DNA of 51,940 nt from Guillardia theta CCMP2712 (Eukaryota > Protista > Cryptophyta), in the NCBI RefSeq assembly GCF_000315625.1, contig NW_005434570.1, forward strand, positions 171,390 through 223,329, read 5' to 3'. Position 1 is the first letter of the stretch; each line of letters opens with the position of its first letter. This document shows positions 6,004 through 40,062 of the stretch, in pieces. The position numbers and the translations under genes were made by a program. Below the pieces are notes generated by a model. That model made no database searches. It saw only the letters and a list, made by a program, of their open reading frames with translations, and was not told the DNA's origin.

Positions 6004-7692
6004 CTGCATGTAGCCGTCGCCGCCCTATGCTCTTGCTTCCAAGGCTCCGTTGGTGAGGAGCGACGAAGATCGACGGAACAAGGTCAAGGGCATCAAGAAC
6101 GACCTGTGCTGAAAGCTAGAGTTGACATCGACGGCGATCGGGAACGATCCGCATGCTGAGGACGGGAAGGACAAGACTACCTCCCCGGCATCTTCCTTGT
6201 GGTCCACAGAGATGTTGGCTGGAGGGTCGAACCTCCAAGAGACCTGCTCGACGTCGGAGCAGCTGTCTACAGCAGCTGATGTCAAGCTCACCTGAAGCTT
6301 CTCCCCTGCCGACTCAACGATGAAGCCCCGCAACAGAGCAGGAGCGACGATGACGGGAGGAGGGTCGGAGATGACAATCACCGTGCTCTCTAGAGGAGAG
6401 ATCGTCTCAAGCGACCAGGGACGTGAAGGAGGAAGCCAAGACGCAGTGATGATGGACGAGTTCCTCCAAACGATCTTCTCGCTCAGACCTCCACTCAGCG
6501 TGATGAAGGAGTTTGTAGGGTTGTCAATGGCGGCAATGGTGGACGCCTTGTCGCTGCTGCAGTGCAGGGATATCATCAACGGATCGCAGCACAACATCTG
6601 TGATATGTCCGGGGGAGCAACTCGTTCTTGACCTTGGGTTGTAGGTCATTCCAGTCAGTCTCAGCGTCCTGGTCCGTATCGACTTGAGACTCGTCGGATC
6701 CGACCAGCAGCTCAGTCTCGTCTCCCAACCCATCGCCGTCGCCGTCTGCCAGTATGTACAACCCACTGAGCGAGACGGAGTAGGCACTGACGTAGTTCCT
6801 CAGCACCTTCACTCCGACTTTGACTCGACCAGGAAAGTAGAAATCCTTCACCCCTTGACTGTTGTATGTCAGCTCTGCCCACTTCAAGTCCCCAGGGTGC
6901 CACAAGAACCCACGGAGAATGTTTCTCCTCCTCTGCACGCGCAGCATGCCTGACTGCAGTCGCGGCGACAGAGAGCTCCCCTTCACCAACGTCCCGTTGT
7001 TGAGCTCAACCCACCTGCGCATGAACAGCTTCTTGTCACATGACACACACAACGCACCATGTCCGAAGAGGACTCACGTGTAATCAAGATCACTGTGCGT
7101 CTTCATGAACAGCCCAGGCTTGACAGATGAGATGTCGGTGTTGTCTTGGACCAGGACAATGCCCAGGATCGCCTGATAAGCGTGTGGCTGTAGAATGCTG
7201 TAATCGCAGAAGGCCAGCTCAACAACGAAGTCTCCCTCGTGCCAGCCCGACACAACGAACCCCTTCTCCACACCTGTTGTAGGCTTCAGCTCAAGGGCAT
7301 TCTCAAACTTTCTCTGTGGATGGTACGGGTGTCTACTGAGTCATCATCGGCCTTCTCACTTCAAAGCAGCAAGATATAGCACAGGCGATGAGGCATTCAA
7401 TGCTCTGAGCGCGTTGCTCACACATGCAGGCTCCATGCGGGACTTGCTCTCTAGATACATGATGGCTCGTTCTGGCAAAGGCAAGCTTACCCACGTTAGA
7501 CTCCAGCCTCAGACCGCATCCAGCGCTTGTTCTGTTGGGTTGATACCTCAGCGCATCTGCAGGAAGGTTGAGCAGCGCGTCTGTCTCGACATGGTCTTCG
7601 GTCAAGCGGTACAGTCGCTGTCCCTGAATGCACGTGGACCAACCCAGCAAGAAAACCAGCAAGAGGCTGCCAGCCTGGCCGCAGGGGAGCAT
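6004..7692 (-). pseudogene. Truncated duplicate (copy B) of the CBM-like gene
   Basis: Colinear with ~1263-2897; 1-nt deletion near 6619 splits the frame; GAT->TAG stop at 6025-6027; similarity ends abruptly at ~6004. Confidence 0.85.
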
Positions 7693-33503: not shown

Positions 33504-33509
<6 letters not shown>

Positions 33510-33664
33510 CTGTAGCTAACCTCGTGTTTCCATACATCTGTCGTCTTAGATCGCATTTCATAACTGTAGCTAACCTCGTGTTTCCATACATCTGTCGTCT
33601 TAGATCGCATTTCATAACTGTAGCTAACCTCGTGTTTCCATACATCTGTCGTCTCAGATCGCAT
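33504..33664. repeat. Three tandem 54-bp units spanning both convergent stop codons
   Basis: tcataactgtagctaacctcgtgtttccatacatctgtcgtctYagatcgcat at 33504, 33558, 33612. Confidence 0.97.
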
Positions 33665-36600
33665 CTACCTCCACATCTTGGTTCACCAGCACCTTTTTGC
33701 GCGCCAAATGTTCTGCATCCTTGAACTTGAGCTCGAGCGGCGCGTACCCGATCACTTGCATGACGCTCCTTGCCGTCGACCCCTCCGCGTGCGCTGCTCG
33801 CCCCGAGTCAGCCACGAGGTTGCGGTAGAGGAACTCGTAGCGAGAGAGCCCCAGGTTGAGGAGGAGGCGACCAGGCTGCCGCAGAGAGCAGAGGAGATCA
33901 GTAACTTCCCCGAGGATCAGGTAAGTCGGCCGTGAGGTGAGTGTGGCCTCCACGTTGTAGGCCATGGAGATGCTCTCCCAGTCTTTGTCGTACTCGCTCC
34001 TCTCGAAGGAGCTCGGATGAAAGAGAGTCCCGTCCCGTCCTTCCCGCCGCCTCTGCAGGTCAAACTCAGCATAACGACAAGAAGGAGGATGTCGGTACAG
34101 ATTATCTCATGATGACAATGGTGGTGGTGGTGGTGGTGGTGGTGGTGATGATGATGATGAGGAGGAGGAGGAGGAGAATGGGGCAGGGCGAGGAGACGAT
34201 CAAATCTTGATGTGAGTGTGTGGTGATGGCGCTGGTAGCTGATGATGATGATGATGATCTTACCCAGCCCTTCCAGGTGCAGCCAGACAGATCAGCTGCA
34301 ACGACACCGTACACGGAGTGGATGGGGTCCAGGAACTGGAGGATGGCTCTGTAGCGGGTGATCATGTGAAGGAACGTCTCGAGCTCCTGGGAGGGGTCCT
34401 GTATCCTCTCCGCGTGCTCGTAGACTTCGTAGTGCTCGGCGTCGAAGGGCTGGAGCTCGATCTTGACTCGAGAGCTGGCAGGGACGTGGAGAAGGATGAG
34501 GGGCTTGGAGTGCTTCTTTGCCGCATCCTTCTCCTGCTTCACCATGTCCCTCACTAGCGCGTTGCGGATGGTCTGAACCTGGTCTCCTCGCTCCCACTGC
34601 CTAAAGGATCTGAGCTGCTGGATCGTGTGAAGGTCCCGCTGCCGCTTCCTGTCTCCGACGGCTCTCTTGAGCAAGTCGACAATGAGGATGACGTAGGAGA
34701 TGAAGATAACTTCGTCCACCCGCTGATTTCTCATCACCCGCACCATGTCAGGGATCAGGTCGTGCTTGCGCCACAAGAAGATGGTCCGCATGTAGTCCTC
34801 GAACTTAATCGTCTCGCTCACATCCTCCGACAGCAGGAACAAGGGCACGAACCGCTTCCAGCTCTCCGTCTTCTCCAGTATGCTCATGTCCCGCTGCAGC
34901 CTCACGAGGACGTTGAGCTCGGAGCGGATCAGGAGCTCAATGGCGTCGTCGTCCTCGTTCCTCACCAGCTCCCCGTCCTTCCCTCGGTACCCGAACGGGT
35001 AGGGCAGCACGCACATCATGCGGTTGAGGACTGAGATAGGAGCTCGACCTGTCTGCCTGTCGAACAAGGAGAAGATCTGCGAGATCAGCTGCGTCTGCTC
35101 CGTGGTCGGGCCCGTCGACCAGTCGCCGTCCTGGGAGTCTCCGACCTCTTCGGTGAAGAAACCGAAGTTGTCGAGGATCATGCCGATGAAGAGATTGAGC
35201 ATCACCTTCTCGCACACGAGCTTCATCACCACGAACACGATGAACGAGTAGCTCTGCCCGCAGTCCCCGAAGGACAAGTTGAAGTCCTTCCACTCCCTCC
35301 ACCCGTAGACTGAGTCATCGAAGACGGGGGTGCAGTAGGGAGGTTGTATCCCGCAGTCCTTCACCAGCTCCTGCCACTCGTCCCCCGTCACGATCTGCAA
35401 GATGGTCATAAGAGAGCTCTCGTATGAGAAGAAACTGGCGGTGGGGCCGAGCCGAACGCCGTTCCTTGTGGTGCCGAACATCTGGACGAAGCTGACAGCG
35501 AAGATGGAGTAGACGAGGACCAGGAGGAGGACGATGTTTGCAAGCTGGGGGAGACAGGAGACCAGGGTCTCAAGGATGATACGGATAGGAGTGATCATCT
35601 TCATCAGCTTGAAGATTCGGAACAACCGAAAAGACTTAGAGAACTGAGAGACCTTGTCGTTCTGTGCCATGTACCCGGCAGAAGACCCGAGCGCAATGAT
35701 GAGGTCGAAAGTCTTCCAGTTGTCATTCAGGAAGGCCCCAGGGCCAAACCCAACGAGGTTGATGCAGACTTCTAGCAAGAGGACGGCGTAGAAGAAGTTG
35801 TTCTGTGAGTTGATCATGTTCTCGAAACTCTGTGAGGCCCCGGCATGATCGACGAGCATGAACGTCACGTTGATCAGCACGCAGAGAGAAGAAGTGACGT
35901 CAAAGTATCTGTGCTCTAGCAGCTTCCTTGCTTGCACGCTGACGCCATTCTGAGGCAGGCGGAACTTGAAGTACTTGGGCTTGTACATGTAGAGCTGACG
36001 GTTGAACCTTGAGAAGATGATGTCCTTCTCAGAAGACCCCTTGTTGGCGTTGAAGCCGTCGATGATAAAACCGACAAACAGGTTCATCACCTGAAGGAGA
36101 ATCAGTAAAAGCAAGAGTCAGCTCAATACACTCACAAACAACCCGCCGATGATGAGGTAGACGACGAAGAACAAGCCGTTGTACACGCTGTAGTTCACCT
36201 GAGGGCTCTGGTCGACGTCTGTCACGTCCATGGCCTGGTAGATCACGTTGACGTACTTGAATGTCATCACCTGGAACAGAGTCTGCACCGAGTTGCCAAA
36301 AGTGTCGAAGTCGAAACGAGGGTTCCGCCAGGAGGAGGGGACCGCAACCCCGTTATCGATGAGGAACCAGCCGAGGCAGTCTGCCTTGCCTTGAGGAAAG
36401 GCGACTGACGGGTCGCTGCAGGACTTGAACTTGCCGCCGAAGAGACCCATGCCTATGAGGCCGAACACCATGAAGGTGAAGATGGTGAAGATGATGACGT
36501 AGAGCACAGGAGTCAGGGTTCGGAGGAGAGCATCTATCACCAGCCTGAGCCCCTCGTTCCTCTTCATCAGCCTCAGCGGCCTCAGGGCTCTAGCAAGGCG

Positions 36601-39600
36601 GATGACCTTGCCGGTGTTGCCTTTCTGAAACCAGCCGGTCTCATCTATCCAGCTGAGGGAGAGCACCAGGAAGTCGAGCAGGTTCCAGCCGTCTTTGAAG
36701 TAGGCCTTCTTGGTGAACACCAGCCCGTGCTCCATCGCGCGAACTGAGAACTCCAGAGTGAAGATAATGTTGAGAAACCAGGTGAGGGCACGGGACACGG
36801 AGGCTGAGATGACGTTCGGAAAATCGGTGATGAGGTGGATGTCAGGAGCTGGAGGTGTGAGGGTCAAGAGGACACAACTGAGAAATATAGAGTTGTAGAC
36901 GATCAAGTCGAACCAAGCTTGTCTGGCCAGCCATGTCGCAAACCTTCGGATGCTGTTGTCTTTGTTGAAGAACATGAGGGTTCTTTCTTCTTCCTTCTTC
37001 TTGGTCTCGTCGATGTTGTAGGAGAAGCGAATCAGAGAATTTTGTGCTACTTGAACAAACTTGGATGTCAGGACAACGCGCTTGTGCTTTGATCCGGAGA
37101 TATGATGCAGAACCTCTTGTGAGAACGACTGCGGATGGTCTGAGAGAGCGCTGCTTCGACGTGGTACTTGTGACATCTCTTTCAACATTTGCGATTGACG
37201 TGAGAGCAGCCAAAGGTTGCGATATGCGTCTCTTATCATCTTCCTCGCAAAGTACAACCTCCCAGGCTGCGCAATCTTGGCAACAGTGTCGTGAATCTTG
37301 AAGTTCTCAATGATGGTAGCGACAAACAAGTTTGAGATGATAAGAGAGGCAAAGGTGAACCAGCCTATCAGGTAAATCGCTGCTCCCAATTGCGCAAACG
37401 TGCCATCCATAGCGTCCAACCCGCTGTATACCACTCCGCTCCACGAGTCACCTATCACGAGTTGAAACGTGGTCAACAGAGCGATAGGTAGCGAGCCGAA
37501 GTTGGATCGCGTGATAGGATCCATCTTCTCCTTGAAGATGTAACGGCCAGCAACCGCAAAAGAGAGGATGAGCACGAAGATGAAGGCTGTAAGGTTCCAC
37601 ACCGCACGGATGCTGCTAAGAGCTGAATACAAGAGATATTGCAAGGTGGGAAAATAATCCATGAGGTAGTAGAGGCGCACAGAGGGCAGTCGGATGAAGA
37701 AGGGACTGGAGATGATGGACCCGATCAGACCGCATGCTATCAAGAGCATCTCAAACTTGTTGCCGCCGTTGTCCCAGAAGTCACCGAAGGAACCATGCGA
37801 GAAGTACTTTAGCAAGAGAAGGAGGAGGAATATGGAGTTGACAATCCAGTAGGACAAGGTTGCGAAAGTTTTGAATGCCTCGGGAGAATCTCTCTGGTTG
37901 ATGGCCATGGCGACGGCGTGATAGAGGATGAGGCAGGACTGGAAGGTCTTGAAGCTGTCGCTCTCGCAGATGCTCTTGGCGATGTGCTGCACCGCCTTCT
38001 CCAGGTCGTCCTCGTGGTCGAGATGATCCCAGGTGACAGGTTCCGGGTGAACCTTGGAGCTCTGAGAGCTCCTCTCTGCCTCAGCCGCTTCAAGCTCCTC
38101 CTCCTTGAGGATGTCCTTGCTCCGCTCCTTCAAGTTCGAGAATGTCCCCGTCACCACTGCGACAAAAATTCCGAGCATCAAGAACGTACACAAGCACGAG
38201 ATGAGGAAGTAGCAGAGGAGCAGGATCGGTTGAAGCTCGGGCTCGCTCTCCAGGGATCTCCAGATGACGTCATAGTAGCTGTCAGGGCATGTGGACTGAA
38301 ACAGGTTCATCAGGGCCCCGGCTATGTTGTCATAGTGAGAGAAACCATAGCTGGGGTTCTCCAGTACCTTGCAGTACTGGTTGACAGGCCGACCGCTCTC
38401 AAAGTCGTTGAGCCCGCAGTCATGGTACCGTCCCTGGTGATCAAGGGGGTAGACCGTGTCGTACTGACCAGGAGTGACGTTGTAGTAGATCTTGCACCAG
38501 GTCAAATACGGGTATCCTCCTTCTATCAGCACGGGCGCATTGCTATAGTCCACCTCCTGTATCGCCTGCCCGTGCTCAGAAAAGTTACAAGTCGGACTCC
38601 AGCTCTCAGCAATCCCCGATGCACAGACAGGAAACGTCTGTCTGAACACAACGCAGTAACGTCGGAAAGAGTTTCGAAGCATCGCCATTAAGAATATACA
38701 GAAGGCGAGCATGAAGAAAAGAAGCATGAAGAAGACGCTGGCTAGTTGAACGGAGCCCTCAGTGATAGTGAGAATGATGAGGTTGATCTCATCAAACGTC
38801 TTGAAGCGCGAGAGAACTTTGAGGAGACGTATCAGACGGAAAGGCAACACGATCCCAGCATCCCCTCCTCCCAGAGACATTAGAACGATGGTGCTGAAGA
38901 AGATCACAAACTCAAGGCAATTCAACGCTGACAGTCGCAGCCATGAATGCTTGTTCTGTACCAGCCCCATAGCCACAACACCGACAAAAACTTCCATACC
39001 CAAGACAGCCAGGCAGAAATTATCGAGAGCAGACAAGGAAGTGTTCAACTTCGAGGCAGAGTTGATCTCAGCTTGAATGATGATTGATACGCTGTTGATA
39101 ATTGTGACCAGAGTGAAAAAGCCATTCCATCGGAACGAGTAATAGATCTCAAAGCATTTCATCCTTACAGGGCTTTTCCGTGAGAAACCCCCGAAGAAGT
39201 ACGGGATGGTACGTTCACAAGCATCTTCTAGCCTCGTCGGAGCATTCTGCAACTTGTTTACTTTCTGTCTGTCAGCATTCATTCGAGCTGTACTCTTGTC
39301 GTCCCTTGTACTATGACGTTCGTCATGGAAGTCATCTAGATTCACTCCGCTGTACTTCAATATCTCAGTCTTCACAATCTCTCGAATTCTCTGCAACCGA
39401 ACTTGGTCCACACTCTTTCCCATGTCCGTTCCATTGTTTTCTCTACTTGTTTCCATATCTGTTCCATTGTTTTCTCTACTTGTTTCCATGTCTGTTCCAT
39501 TGTTTTCTCTACTAGTTTCCATGTCTGTTTCATTATTTTTTCGATTAGTTTCCATCTCTGTTTCATTGTGCAAAACAACATGTTGATGCGTGCTTGGCTC

Positions 39601-40062
39601 TTCTGACTGAGAGCTTTGCGCCTCTCTCTGGCTCTCAGTCTGCGATGTCAGAGTGAGAGGCTTGAGGACAGACATTCTCTCACGCAGAGCTTTTAGCTTG
39701 GCGATTCTTCCTTGAAACTCCTCCAGGTGCCTCTCAAGGTCTGCCCGGTGCTTCCTCCTCCAGTCCCCCGTAGCTGTGCGATCACTGGCAGCTTCCGAGT
39801 TGAGCTGTCGGCCTGAATCGCCTTCAACGCTGCCATTTGTGACATGTTGAGGAAGATCATGAGGGTGATCTTGATTTTCGCTTACAATGGTGATGTTTGC
39901 TTCAGAACGCAGAGAAACATCGTCGCTGCCTATCGATGAAAGTATGGATGCATGAGGCGACAAATTTGTTGTCGCGTCGTCACTAGGACTATCGTTATGG
40001 TCGTATTTGTCAAGATGCTCATTATCATCATGGTCTTTCATCGCTCGCTCTCTTCTTCTCAT
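33654..40062 (-). CDS. Four-domain (4x6TM) voltage-gated-type cation channel alpha subunit (Cav/Nav/NALCN superfamily)
   Basis: ORFs 36118-40134, 34102-36114 and 33654-33965 joined by introns 36091-36135 and ~34053-34263; S4 RLARALRPLRLMKR; pore loops; S6 ends NLFVATIIENF, NLFVGFIIDGF, NLFIGMILDNF. Confidence 0.93.
39415..39570 (-). repeat. 33-bp coding tandem repeat (NGTDMETSREN x4-5) in the channel N-terminus
   Basis: Visible in DNA and translation. Confidence 0.9.

What the first reader, a model, noticed from the sequence alone, without database searches (positions are those of the whole stretch)
33654..40062. Four-domain channel with an apparent D/D/K/D selectivity filter and degenerate domain II voltage sensor
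Seen: pore loops QSTCPDSY (D, 38281), QLVIGDSW (D, 37447), QVMTFKYV (K, 36256; one residue shorter than Nav TFKGW) and QIVTGDEW (D, 35380). S4-II reads FIRLPSVRLYYL with only two Arg, while S4-III is fully charged. Established: Cav is EEEE, Nav DEKA, NALCN EEKE, and a domain III Lys favours Na+ over Ca2+. Inference: a possibly independent Na+-permeable or leak-type channel in an alga. It is also nearly intron-free (one ~4-kb exon) among intron-dense neighbours.
Basis: partly seen in the sequence, partly recalled or inferred. Interest (0 to 1): 0.7.

Follow-up and report, generated by a model that had tools for sequence, protein, structure and literature searches.

The report
Cryptophyte D/D/K/D four-domain cation channel
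This is an expressed, correctly spliced gene of the alga Guillardia theta for a four-domain cation channel whose pore ring reads Asp/Asp/Lys/Asp; it is one of six such genes in the genome, the family and its lysine were already described from sequence in 2018, and what ions it passes has never been measured.

Summary
A minus-strand gene (CDS 40062-33654, three exons, 2,050 aa) encodes four Ion_trans repeats. Pairwise and multiple alignments put D, D, K and D in the columns that hold EEEE in Cav1 and DEKA in Nav1. The domain III loop is one residue shorter after the Lys. S4-II has only two Arg, while S4-I, III and IV are normally charged. Spliced RNA-derived contigs from three studies confirm both introns (45 and 211 nt).

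It is not new as a kind. Pozdnyakov et al. 2018 (PMC5824947) reported D/D/K/D(G) filters and R/K-poor S4-II in Guillardia channels and proposed Na+ permeability. This gene is a further paralogue, absent from their ten sequences. I find six D/D/K/D paralogues in the genome. They belong to a clade whose named members are all cryptophytes and in which K and the deletion are nearly universal.

The Lys arose independently of animal Nav1. In my trees the clade sits next to fungal Cch1, but this is a meeting of long branches. The genome also encodes Mid1/FAM155-like proteins, as a 2025 preprint reported for cryptists. A NALCN/Cch1-type affinity is therefore possible but unproven.

Ion selectivity is untested. 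This scan noted other odd-filter channels in this genome, but not this family.

The parts
36136..40062 (-). CDS exon 1 (1,309 codons): N-terminal cytoplasmic region, domains I-III up to the middle of S6-III. The ATG is at 40062; an alternative ATG at 40041 aligns with the Hanusia start.
   Evidence: ORF and translation; Pfam Ion_trans x3; the RNA-derived contigs are collinear to the end of the laid stretch at 39400, and the contig length left over would reach about 40110 (an extrapolation, not aligned)
36091..36135 (-). Intron 1, 45 nt, GTGAGT..CAG, phase 0, contains an in-frame TGA; it interrupts S6 of domain III.
   Evidence: Sequence. Skipped in contigs of runs X1 and X2, and a loose end in X4 fits the spliced junction. 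Absent from paralogues on C128, C4, C38 and C29.
34264..36090 (-). CDS exon 2 (609 codons): rest of S6-III, III-IV linker, domain IV, conserved C-terminal domain.
34053..34263 (-). Intron 2, 211 nt, GTAAGA..CAG, phase 0, rich in trinucleotide repeats.
   Evidence: Sequence; skipped in contigs of X1, X2 and X4; TGG repeat
33654..34052 (-). CDS exon 3 (132 codons plus stop): C-terminal tail with the paralogue-conserved ..VIGY.. end motif.
   Evidence: comparison with P0008 and P0009
38281..38283 (-). Domain I filter Asp (residue 594), in CPDSYY; the usual Trp at +2 is Tyr.
37447..37449 (-). Domain II filter Asp (residue 872), in IGDSW.
36256..36258 (-). Domain III filter Lys (residue 1269), in TFK-YV; one residue is missing after K relative to Nav TFKGW and Cav TFEGW.
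35380..35382 (-). Domain IV filter Asp (residue 1546 of the spliced product), in TGDEW.
38797..38841 (-). S4 of domain I (FRLIRLLKVLSRFK): R, R, K at every third position, plus R and K.
37663..37698 (-). S4 of domain II (FIRLPSVRLYYL): two Arg only, five apart. The second Arg kept by other clade members is Tyr here, and an Asp follows.
36559..36609 (-). S4 of domain III (KVIRLARALRPLRLMKR): six R/K at every third position.
35596..35637 (-). S4 of domain IV (KSFRLFRIFKLMKM): five R/K at every third position.
36010..36024 (-). DIIFS in the short III-IV linker, aligned by phmmer with DIFMT (the IFM inactivation motif) of Nav1.8. A hydrophobic-aromatic pair is kept here in the paralogues.
   Evidence: MAFFT aligned this linker differently, so the equivalence is tentative.
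39420..39569 (-). 33-bp tandem repeat (4.5 copies) encoding 11-residue repeats in the cytoplasmic N-terminus; not present in the Hanusia orthologue.

Best explanation
The gene encodes a 2,050-residue pseudo-tetrameric four-domain cation channel of the D/D/K/D family, whose named members are all cryptophytes (clade WSC VIII of Pozdnyakov et al. 2018). Shown: it has four Ion_trans repeats, it is transcribed and spliced, its filter ring is Asp/Asp/Lys/Asp, and S4-II is degenerate while S4-I, III and IV are canonical. Inferred: the channel is still gated by voltage through sensors I, III and IV, with sensor II a structural remnant. By analogy, in two-pore channels only one of the two sensors senses voltage (my own knowledge). 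The ring carries a net charge of -2, uses short Asp side chains and has a Lys in domain III. Such a ring cannot form the high-affinity Ca2+ site of an EEEE pore, so the channel should carry mainly Na+ or other monovalent cations, possibly with block by Ca2+. The short III-IV linker with a hydrophobic-aromatic motif could act as a Nav-like inactivation particle. The likely role is depolarisation or excitability of the flagellate cell. The Lys was acquired independently of animal Nav1 and of bilaterian NALCN.
For: Pfam Ion_trans x4. The best solved relatives are Cav1, Cav2, Cav3 and Nav, at E 1e-80 to 1e-46; NALCN scores E 1e-33 and 1e-22. Filter columns were assigned by pairwise alignments and two multiple alignments. 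K and the one-residue deletion are kept in 29 of 32 clade sequences that cover domain III, and D is kept in domains I, II and IV in nearly all. All six G. theta paralogues are D/D/K/D. The Hanusia phi orthologue is 84% identical. Spliced contigs from three studies match the window without differences. DIIFS aligns with Nav1.8 DIFMT. The role of a filter Lys in Na+ selectivity or permeability is established (summarised in PMC5824947, and in 10.1101/2025.04.04.647097).
Against: No current has been recorded from any family member, so selectivity and gating are inferred from motifs alone. The missing residue after K, and Tyr in place of the conserved Trp in domains I and III, may reshape the filter unpredictably. 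Pozdnyakov et al. assume that channels with an R/K-poor S4 are voltage-insensitive. The IFM equivalence depends on the alignment used (differs). My trees place the clade beside Cch1, a family not known for fast voltage gating. The only raw-read RNA run showed almost no coverage of the gene, so expression may be low.
Confidence: 0.6

Rival explanations
1. It is a NALCN/Cch1-type channel: a weakly voltage-dependent background (leak) or stimulus-activated cation channel that works with a Mid1/FAM155-like extracellular subunit. Its domain III Lys would parallel the EEKE filter of bilaterian NALCN.
For: Fungal Cch1 falls on the same side of a strongly supported branch as the D/D/K/D clade. This holds for domains I-III under LG+G4 (SH-aLRT 100) and LG+C20 (99), and for domain IV (90). 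The genome has Pfam Mid1 matches above the curated cut-off, with the conserved Cys-rich motif ..YSKIWTCSNCTD.YKRWLCS. A 2025 preprint reports cryptist channel clades proximal to NALCN/Cch1 and Mid1/FAM155 homologues in Cryptista. The ring charge of -2 with K in domain III equals that of EEKE.
Against: The tree tool itself flags the Cch1 join as a meeting of long branches. No NALCN, apusomonad or CRuMs sequence could be included. NALCN is the weakest of the four-domain hits among solved structures. Three S4 segments are fully charged, unlike NALCN and Cch1. No UNC79 or UNC80 Pfam match was found in the genome, although that blank is weak. Whether the preprint's cryptist clade is this one was not verified.
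Confidence: 0.25
2. Despite the Lys, it is a Ca2+-permeable or non-selective cation channel used for Ca2+ signalling, like most protist four-domain channels.
For: Three acidic residues remain in the ring, and domain IV has Glu at +1 (DE). The closest solved relatives by score are Cav channels. The deletion after K might move the Lys side chain out of the ring.
Against: A Lys in the filter is reported as important for Na+ selectivity or permeability in Nav and NALCN, and is thought to disrupt high-affinity Ca2+ binding in the pore (literature cited). The Lys is conserved across the clade, which suggests it is functionally important.
Confidence: 0.12
3. It is a decaying or non-functional paralogue whose odd S4-II and in-frame stop in the 45-nt segment reflect loss of function.
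For: S4-II is more degenerate than in the paralogues. The 45-nt segment carries a TGA, and the Hanusia transcript model stops there.
Against: The 45 nt are removed in assembled transcripts. All three exons are open. The orthologue in another genus is 84% identical, and all functional motifs are intact.
Confidence: 0.02

Closest known systems
Guillardia theta four-domain channels XP_005840919.1 (Guillt7, GUITHDRAFT_132377) and XP_005824876.1 (Guillt6). I infer these to be clade WSC VIII of Pozdnyakov et al. 2018 (PMC5824947); the paper's text names only the genus for that clade.
   Same: Same genome and same clade (SH-aLRT 100). D/D/K/D filter, T-x-K-Y domain III loop with the one-residue deletion, R/K-poor S4-II, conserved C-terminal domain, and very long exons.
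   Different: Only 37-43% identical. This paralogue is not among the ten G. theta sequences of that paper. Its S4-II has lost one more Arg, and it has a 45-nt intron in S6-III that those on C128, C4, C38 and C29 lack.
Oomycete D/D/K/D(G) channels (WSC VI, Phytophthora and Saprolegnia; PMC5824947)
   Same: Same filter formula, with an acidic residue at +1 in domain IV, and the same published proposal of Na+ permeability.
   Different: A separate well-supported clade in that paper. No named oomycete protein appeared among the close hits of my two word searches. Whether they share the deletion or a common origin was not tested.
NALCN (EEKE in vertebrates, flies and nematodes) and fungal Cch1, with their FAM155/Mid1 subunit
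   Same: Four-domain channel with Lys in domain III among three acidic residues and a ring charge of -2. Cch1 is the nearest named family in my trees. Mid1-like genes are present in the genome.
   Different: Asp instead of Glu. Three canonical S4 segments. No UNC79 or UNC80 match. Weak direct similarity to NALCN. The NALCN Lys arose within animals, since early-diverging animals have EEEE, so the Lys here is convergent at best.
Animal Nav1 sodium channels (DEKA)
   Same: The T-F-K motif in the domain III P-loop is identical up to the Lys. The III-IV linker is short and has a hydrophobic-aromatic motif at the IFM site.
   Different: Filter is D/D/K/D, not D/E/K/A. Gly-Trp after K is replaced by Tyr, one residue shorter. 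No Na_trans_assoc domain. Distant in the tree.
Cav1/Cav2/Cav3 calcium channels (EEEE/EEDD)
   Same: Highest-scoring solved relatives. Same overall architecture and a Cys-rich domain I turret.
   Different: No EEEE or EEDD ring. The DI-DII linker was not examined for an alpha-interaction domain. The precomputed Pfam lists for the clade members show no GPHH (PF16905) or Ca_chan_IQ (PF08763) domain.

Membership tests
Four-domain Cav/Nav/NALCN superfamily | Four Ion_trans (6-TM) repeats in one polypeptide | tested here: met
   Pfam PF00520 three times in exon 1 and once in exon 2. Spliced transcripts join the exons.
Four-domain Cav/Nav/NALCN superfamily | A P-loop with T-x-[filter residue]-x-W between S5 and S6 of each repeat | tested here: met
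   Trp is replaced by Tyr in domains I and III.
Four-domain Cav/Nav/NALCN superfamily | S4 with R/K at every third position in all four repeats | tested here: not met
   Met for S4-I, III and IV. S4-II has two Arg, five apart. The same is true of NALCN, Cch1 and Nax, which are members, so this does not exclude membership.
Cryptophyte D/D/K/D clade (WSC VIII, PMC5824947) | Falls in a supported clade with the G. theta channels Guillt6 and Guillt7 | tested here: met
   Clade support is SH-aLRT 100 in three trees. Those trees include P0008, which is Guillt7. Guillt6 was not in the trees; C89 is identified as Guillt6 by its S4 strings only.
Cryptophyte D/D/K/D clade (WSC VIII, PMC5824947) | D/D/K/D(G) selectivity filter | tested here: met
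Cryptophyte D/D/K/D clade (WSC VIII, PMC5824947) | R/K-poor S4 in domain II | tested here: met
   supplementary table of PMC5824947
Animal Nav1 | D/E/K/A filter | tested here: not met
   The filter is D/D/K/D.
Animal Nav1 | Groups with the Nav1/Nav2 clade | tested here: not met
   Nav forms its own clade at support 100, apart from this clade.
Animal Nav1 | IFM inactivation motif in the III-IV linker | tested here: inconclusive
   phmmer aligns DIIFS with DIFMT. MAFFT aligns the linker otherwise.
NALCN/Cch1 | Phylogenetic grouping with NALCN and Cch1 | tested here: inconclusive
   Cch1 is adjacent in all three trees (support 100, 99 and 90), but the join is flagged as a meeting of long branches. 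No NALCN sequence was available.
NALCN/Cch1 | FAM155/Mid1 partner encoded in the genome | tested here: met
   PF12929 scores 36.3 and 28.6 bits against a cut-off of 28.6, on contigs C93 and C5, with collinear second hits. Binding to this channel was not tested.
NALCN/Cch1 | UNC79/UNC80 partners | tested here: inconclusive
   No match to PF14776 or PF15778. The tool warns that this blank does not show absence.
NALCN/Cch1 | Charge-poor S4 in several domains | tested here: not met
   Only S4-II is charge-poor.

The most novel reading that the evidence does not exclude
The cryptophyte D/D/K/D channels are the cryptist branch of the ancient NALCN/Cch1 lineage and work with the Mid1/FAM155-like proteins encoded in the same genome. 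On this reading they evolved a domain III lysine, together with a clade-specific one-residue shortening of that pore loop, independently of both Nav1 and bilaterian NALCN. That would be a third origin of lysine-based Na+ permeation, expanded to six paralogues with differently eroded voltage sensor II in one alga.
Probability: 0.3. Interest if true: 0.55.

Novelty: new member of a known kind. Interest (0 to 1): 0.3.

Why it matters
Lysine-bearing filters outside animals are the best candidates for independently evolved four-domain sodium channels, and none has been recorded. This gene adds little to that idea, which was published in 2018. The follow-up does give a verified full-length gene model. 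It shows that G. theta has six such genes rather than the two in the literature set. It documents a clade-wide deletion next to the Lys. It also points to a possible link to the NALCN/Cch1-Mid1 system. Cryptophytes are the source of widely used channelrhodopsins. Knowing which channels shape their membrane potential downstream of those photoreceptors would be useful.

Tried and rejected
I repeated it with FFT-NS-2.

2. A bacterial promoter/terminator scan upstream of the gene is meaningless for a eukaryote and was ignored.

3. The ESM Atlas feature search returned only generic Ion_trans and Nav-like clusters, so it gave no help on NALCN versus other families.

4. The raw-read RNA run X19 gave almost no reads on the gene, with about 6% of the run read. 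Expression and splicing therefore rest on Logan contigs of X1, X2 and X4, which are spliced and hence RNA-derived.

5. No oomycete D/D/K/D sequence and no NALCN sequence came back from the two word searches. Common origin with either could not be tested. The third word search and the exhaustive representative search were not spent on this.

6. No structure model was made. A model lacking domain IV would not show the assembled filter.

7. All searches were run exon by exon, by reference, and the joined product was never built or submitted.

8. No complex prediction with the Mid1-like proteins was run. Their gene models are multi-exon, and I do not claim binding.

9. The pseudogene reading was rejected (see rivals).

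Full report
**What is there.** On the minus strand, two long open frames (40134-36118 and 36114-34102) and a short one (33965-33654) carry a single gene.

- Pfam finds Ion_trans three times in the first frame (E 4e-91) and once in the second (E 2e-39).
- The first two frames are separated by 45 nt that begin GTGAGT, end CAG and contain a TGA. Removing them joins ..IIGGLF to VMNLFVGFIIDGF, a normal S6 of domain III.
- A second intron runs from GTAAGA at 34263 to CAG at 34053 (211 nt). It joins ..CTWKGW to a last exon whose product aligns with the C-termini of the paralogues.
- Logan contigs of three runs from three studies skip exactly these two segments, and no other, and match the window without any difference. 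The skipped segments have CT..AC ends on the plus strand, which is GT..AG on the gene strand.
- The 6.2-kb contigs start at 33625 and are collinear to the end of the laid stretch at 39400. Their remaining length would reach about 40110, an extrapolation that was not aligned.
- The gene is therefore transcribed and spliced. The CDS is 40062-36136, 36090-34264 and 34052-33654, giving 2,050 codons.
- I never joined the exons. Every search was run exon by exon, by reference.

**The organism.** The window's genome has 87.1 Mb in 669 contigs. Contigs C4 and C128 have exactly the lengths recorded for the contigs of the NCBI proteins GUITHDRAFT_132377 and GUITHDRAFT_166006 of Guillardia theta CCMP2712. 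Their translations contain the same strings as those proteins. This confirms an earlier scan note that the genome is G. theta.

**The filter.**

- phmmer alignments to solved Cav1.2 put the Asp of CPDSYY opposite the domain I glutamate of Cav1.2 and the Asp of IGDSW opposite its domain II glutamate.
- The Lys of TFKYV was seen opposite a Cav1.2 filter glutamate only in a stretch where the query's domain III aligned to Cav1.2 domain I. The domain III to domain III alignment was cut off in the output. A one-residue gap follows K.
- Two multiple alignments include Nav1 (D/E/K/A), Nav2 (D/E/E/A), Cav1 (E/E/E/E) and Cch1 (N/E/E/E). Both put D/D/K/D in the same four columns, with the Lys in the column of the Nav1 Lys, and both show the same gap. 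The placement of the domain IV Asp of TGDEW rests on these two alignments.
- The Lys lies two residues after the conserved P1-helix Thr, exactly as in Nav1 TFKGW. The deletion is on its C-terminal side, so the assignment does not depend on where the gap is placed.
- The conserved Trp at +2 is Tyr in domains I and III.

**The voltage sensors.** S4-III has six R/K at every third position and S4-IV has five. S4-I has three regular charges plus two more. S4-II reads IRLPSVRLYYLMD, with two Arg five residues apart. Other clade members mostly have ..P..R..R.. there, and two G. theta paralogues (C29, C38) keep three or four Arg. In this gene and its Hanusia orthologue the second Arg is Tyr.

**Family.**

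- A six-frame search of the genome finds five close paralogues on contigs C128, C4, C38, C29 and C89. All are D/D/K/D with a T-[FIL]-K-Y domain III loop.
- Word searches of the protein collection find about 35 clade members. The named ones come only from cryptophytes: Guillardia, Hanusia phi, Hemiselmis rufescens and Cryptomonas paramaecium. After these, scores drop sharply to about 27-30% identity with other channels.
- The Hanusia orthologue is 84% identical.
- K is present in 29 of 32 clade sequences that cover domain III. The exceptions have N, E or P. All 32 show the deletion.

**Literature.**

- Pozdnyakov et al. 2018 (PMC5824947) already report D/D/K/D(G) filters in a Guillardia clade (WSC VIII) and an oomycete clade (WSC VI). 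They compare them to NALCN EEKE, note the acidic +1 residue in domain IV, and propose Na+ selectivity or permeability.
- Their supplementary table gives R/K-poor S4-II strings for Guillt6 and Guillt7. These match the C89 and C4 paralogues. None of their ten G. theta sequences matches this gene.
- PMC6259924 also mentions DDKD pores in non-animal channels, citing Verret et al. 2010.
- The kind is therefore known from sequence. This gene is an additional member. No electrophysiology was found.

**Relationships.**

- I built trees on domains I-III (867 columns, 46 rows) under LG+G4 and LG+C20-PMSF, and on domain IV (326 columns, 49 rows). Rows covering too little of the region were left out and are listed.
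- All three recover the D/D/K/D clade at SH-aLRT 100. Nav1 DEKA nests within Nav2 DEEA far from it, so the Lys is independent of the animal one.
- In all three, fungal Cch1 lies on the clade's side of a supported branch (100, 99 and 90). Both lineages are long-branched and the tool flags the join as unreliable. I had no NALCN sequence to break the branch.
- A 2025 preprint (10.1101/2025.04.04.647097) finds cryptist channel clades proximal to NALCN/Cch1, and FAM155/Mid1 homologues in Cryptista.
- I confirm Pfam Mid1 matches above the cut-off at two G. theta loci, with the conserved cysteine motif. I find no UNC79 or UNC80 match, though that blank is weak.
- A NALCN/Cch1 affinity is thus plausible but not established. 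I put it near even odds.

**How it most likely works.**

- The evidence shows a four-domain pore-loop channel that is expressed and has a conserved Asp/Asp/Lys/Asp ring.
- By inference, a Lys among three short acidic side chains should abolish the high-affinity Ca2+ site and favour Na+ or monovalent flux. This matches what is described for Nav and NALCN in the literature cited.
- Three canonical S4 segments argue for voltage gating despite the dead sensor II.
- The short III-IV linker has a hydrophobic-aromatic motif, DIIFS, aligned to DIFMT of Nav1.8. The paralogues keep a similar pair (IF, LF, FY, LY, IY). This could serve fast inactivation, but MAFFT aligns the linker differently.
- The rivals are a NALCN-like, Mid1-assisted background channel and a Ca2+-permeable channel. 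Only recordings can decide between them.

**Gene structure.** It is partly a family trait. The C4 and C128 paralogues align without interruption over more than 4.5 kb. The 45-nt intron is absent from C128, C4, C38 and C29, but its position is shared with Hanusia, whose transcript model reads into it and stops. Intron density of the neighbouring genes was not tested. The ORF map merely shows that this gene's two exons are by far the longest open frames in the window.

**Verdict.** The gene is a new member of a known kind, of modest interest.

Noticed in passing
window 33504-33664: A 54-bp tandem repeat (3.0 copies, 99% match) covers the last codons, the stop codon and the 3' UTR of the channel gene. 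Transcript contigs break inside it at 33625. Reads with a poly(A) tail mark an end at 33555, probably of the convergent plus-strand neighbour.
   Followed up: partly
window 36091-36135; protein P0001 (Hanusia phi): The Hanusia phi orthologue's transcript-derived model ends ..GGLFVSVV, so it reads into the same intron position and stops. The tiny S6-III intron is therefore conserved between genera and was retained in that transcript. Retention would truncate the channel after domain III, and might be regulated.
   Followed up: partly
G000:C93:240431-242264 (L023, L027); G000:C5:576970-577086 (L024); weaker hits on C105 and C2: Mid1/FAM155-like genes in G. theta. Pfam PF12929 scores 36.3 and 28.6 bits, and both loci carry the motif ..YSKIWTCSNCTD.YKRWLCS. 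These are possible partners of NALCN/Cch1-like channels.
   Followed up: partly
G000:C128 (L013, L018); proteins P0009 and P0004: The NCBI model GUITHDRAFT_166006 lacks the domain II S4 and pore region that is present in the genome and in the otherwise identical MMETSP transcript P0004. The public model appears to skip part of the gene.
   Followed up: partly
window 39420-39569: A 33-bp repeat (4.5 copies, 90% match) encodes 11-residue repeats (..NNGTDMETSRE..) in the cytoplasmic N-terminus. They are absent from the Hanusia orthologue, so this is a recent expansion.
   Followed up: no
G000:C89 (L017), about 7113-7279 of the joined stretch: In the C89 paralogue (Guillt6), the tblastn pieces on either side of S6-III are about 140 nt further apart than the residues between them need. 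This hints at an intron near the same site as the 45-nt intron here.
   Followed up: no
window 34107-34188: Trinucleotide repeats (TGG and ATG/GAT types on the plus strand) lie inside intron 2. They read as poly-Thr, poly-Ile and poly-Leu in the exon 2 frame, which is why the open frame runs on past the true splice donor.
   Followed up: yes
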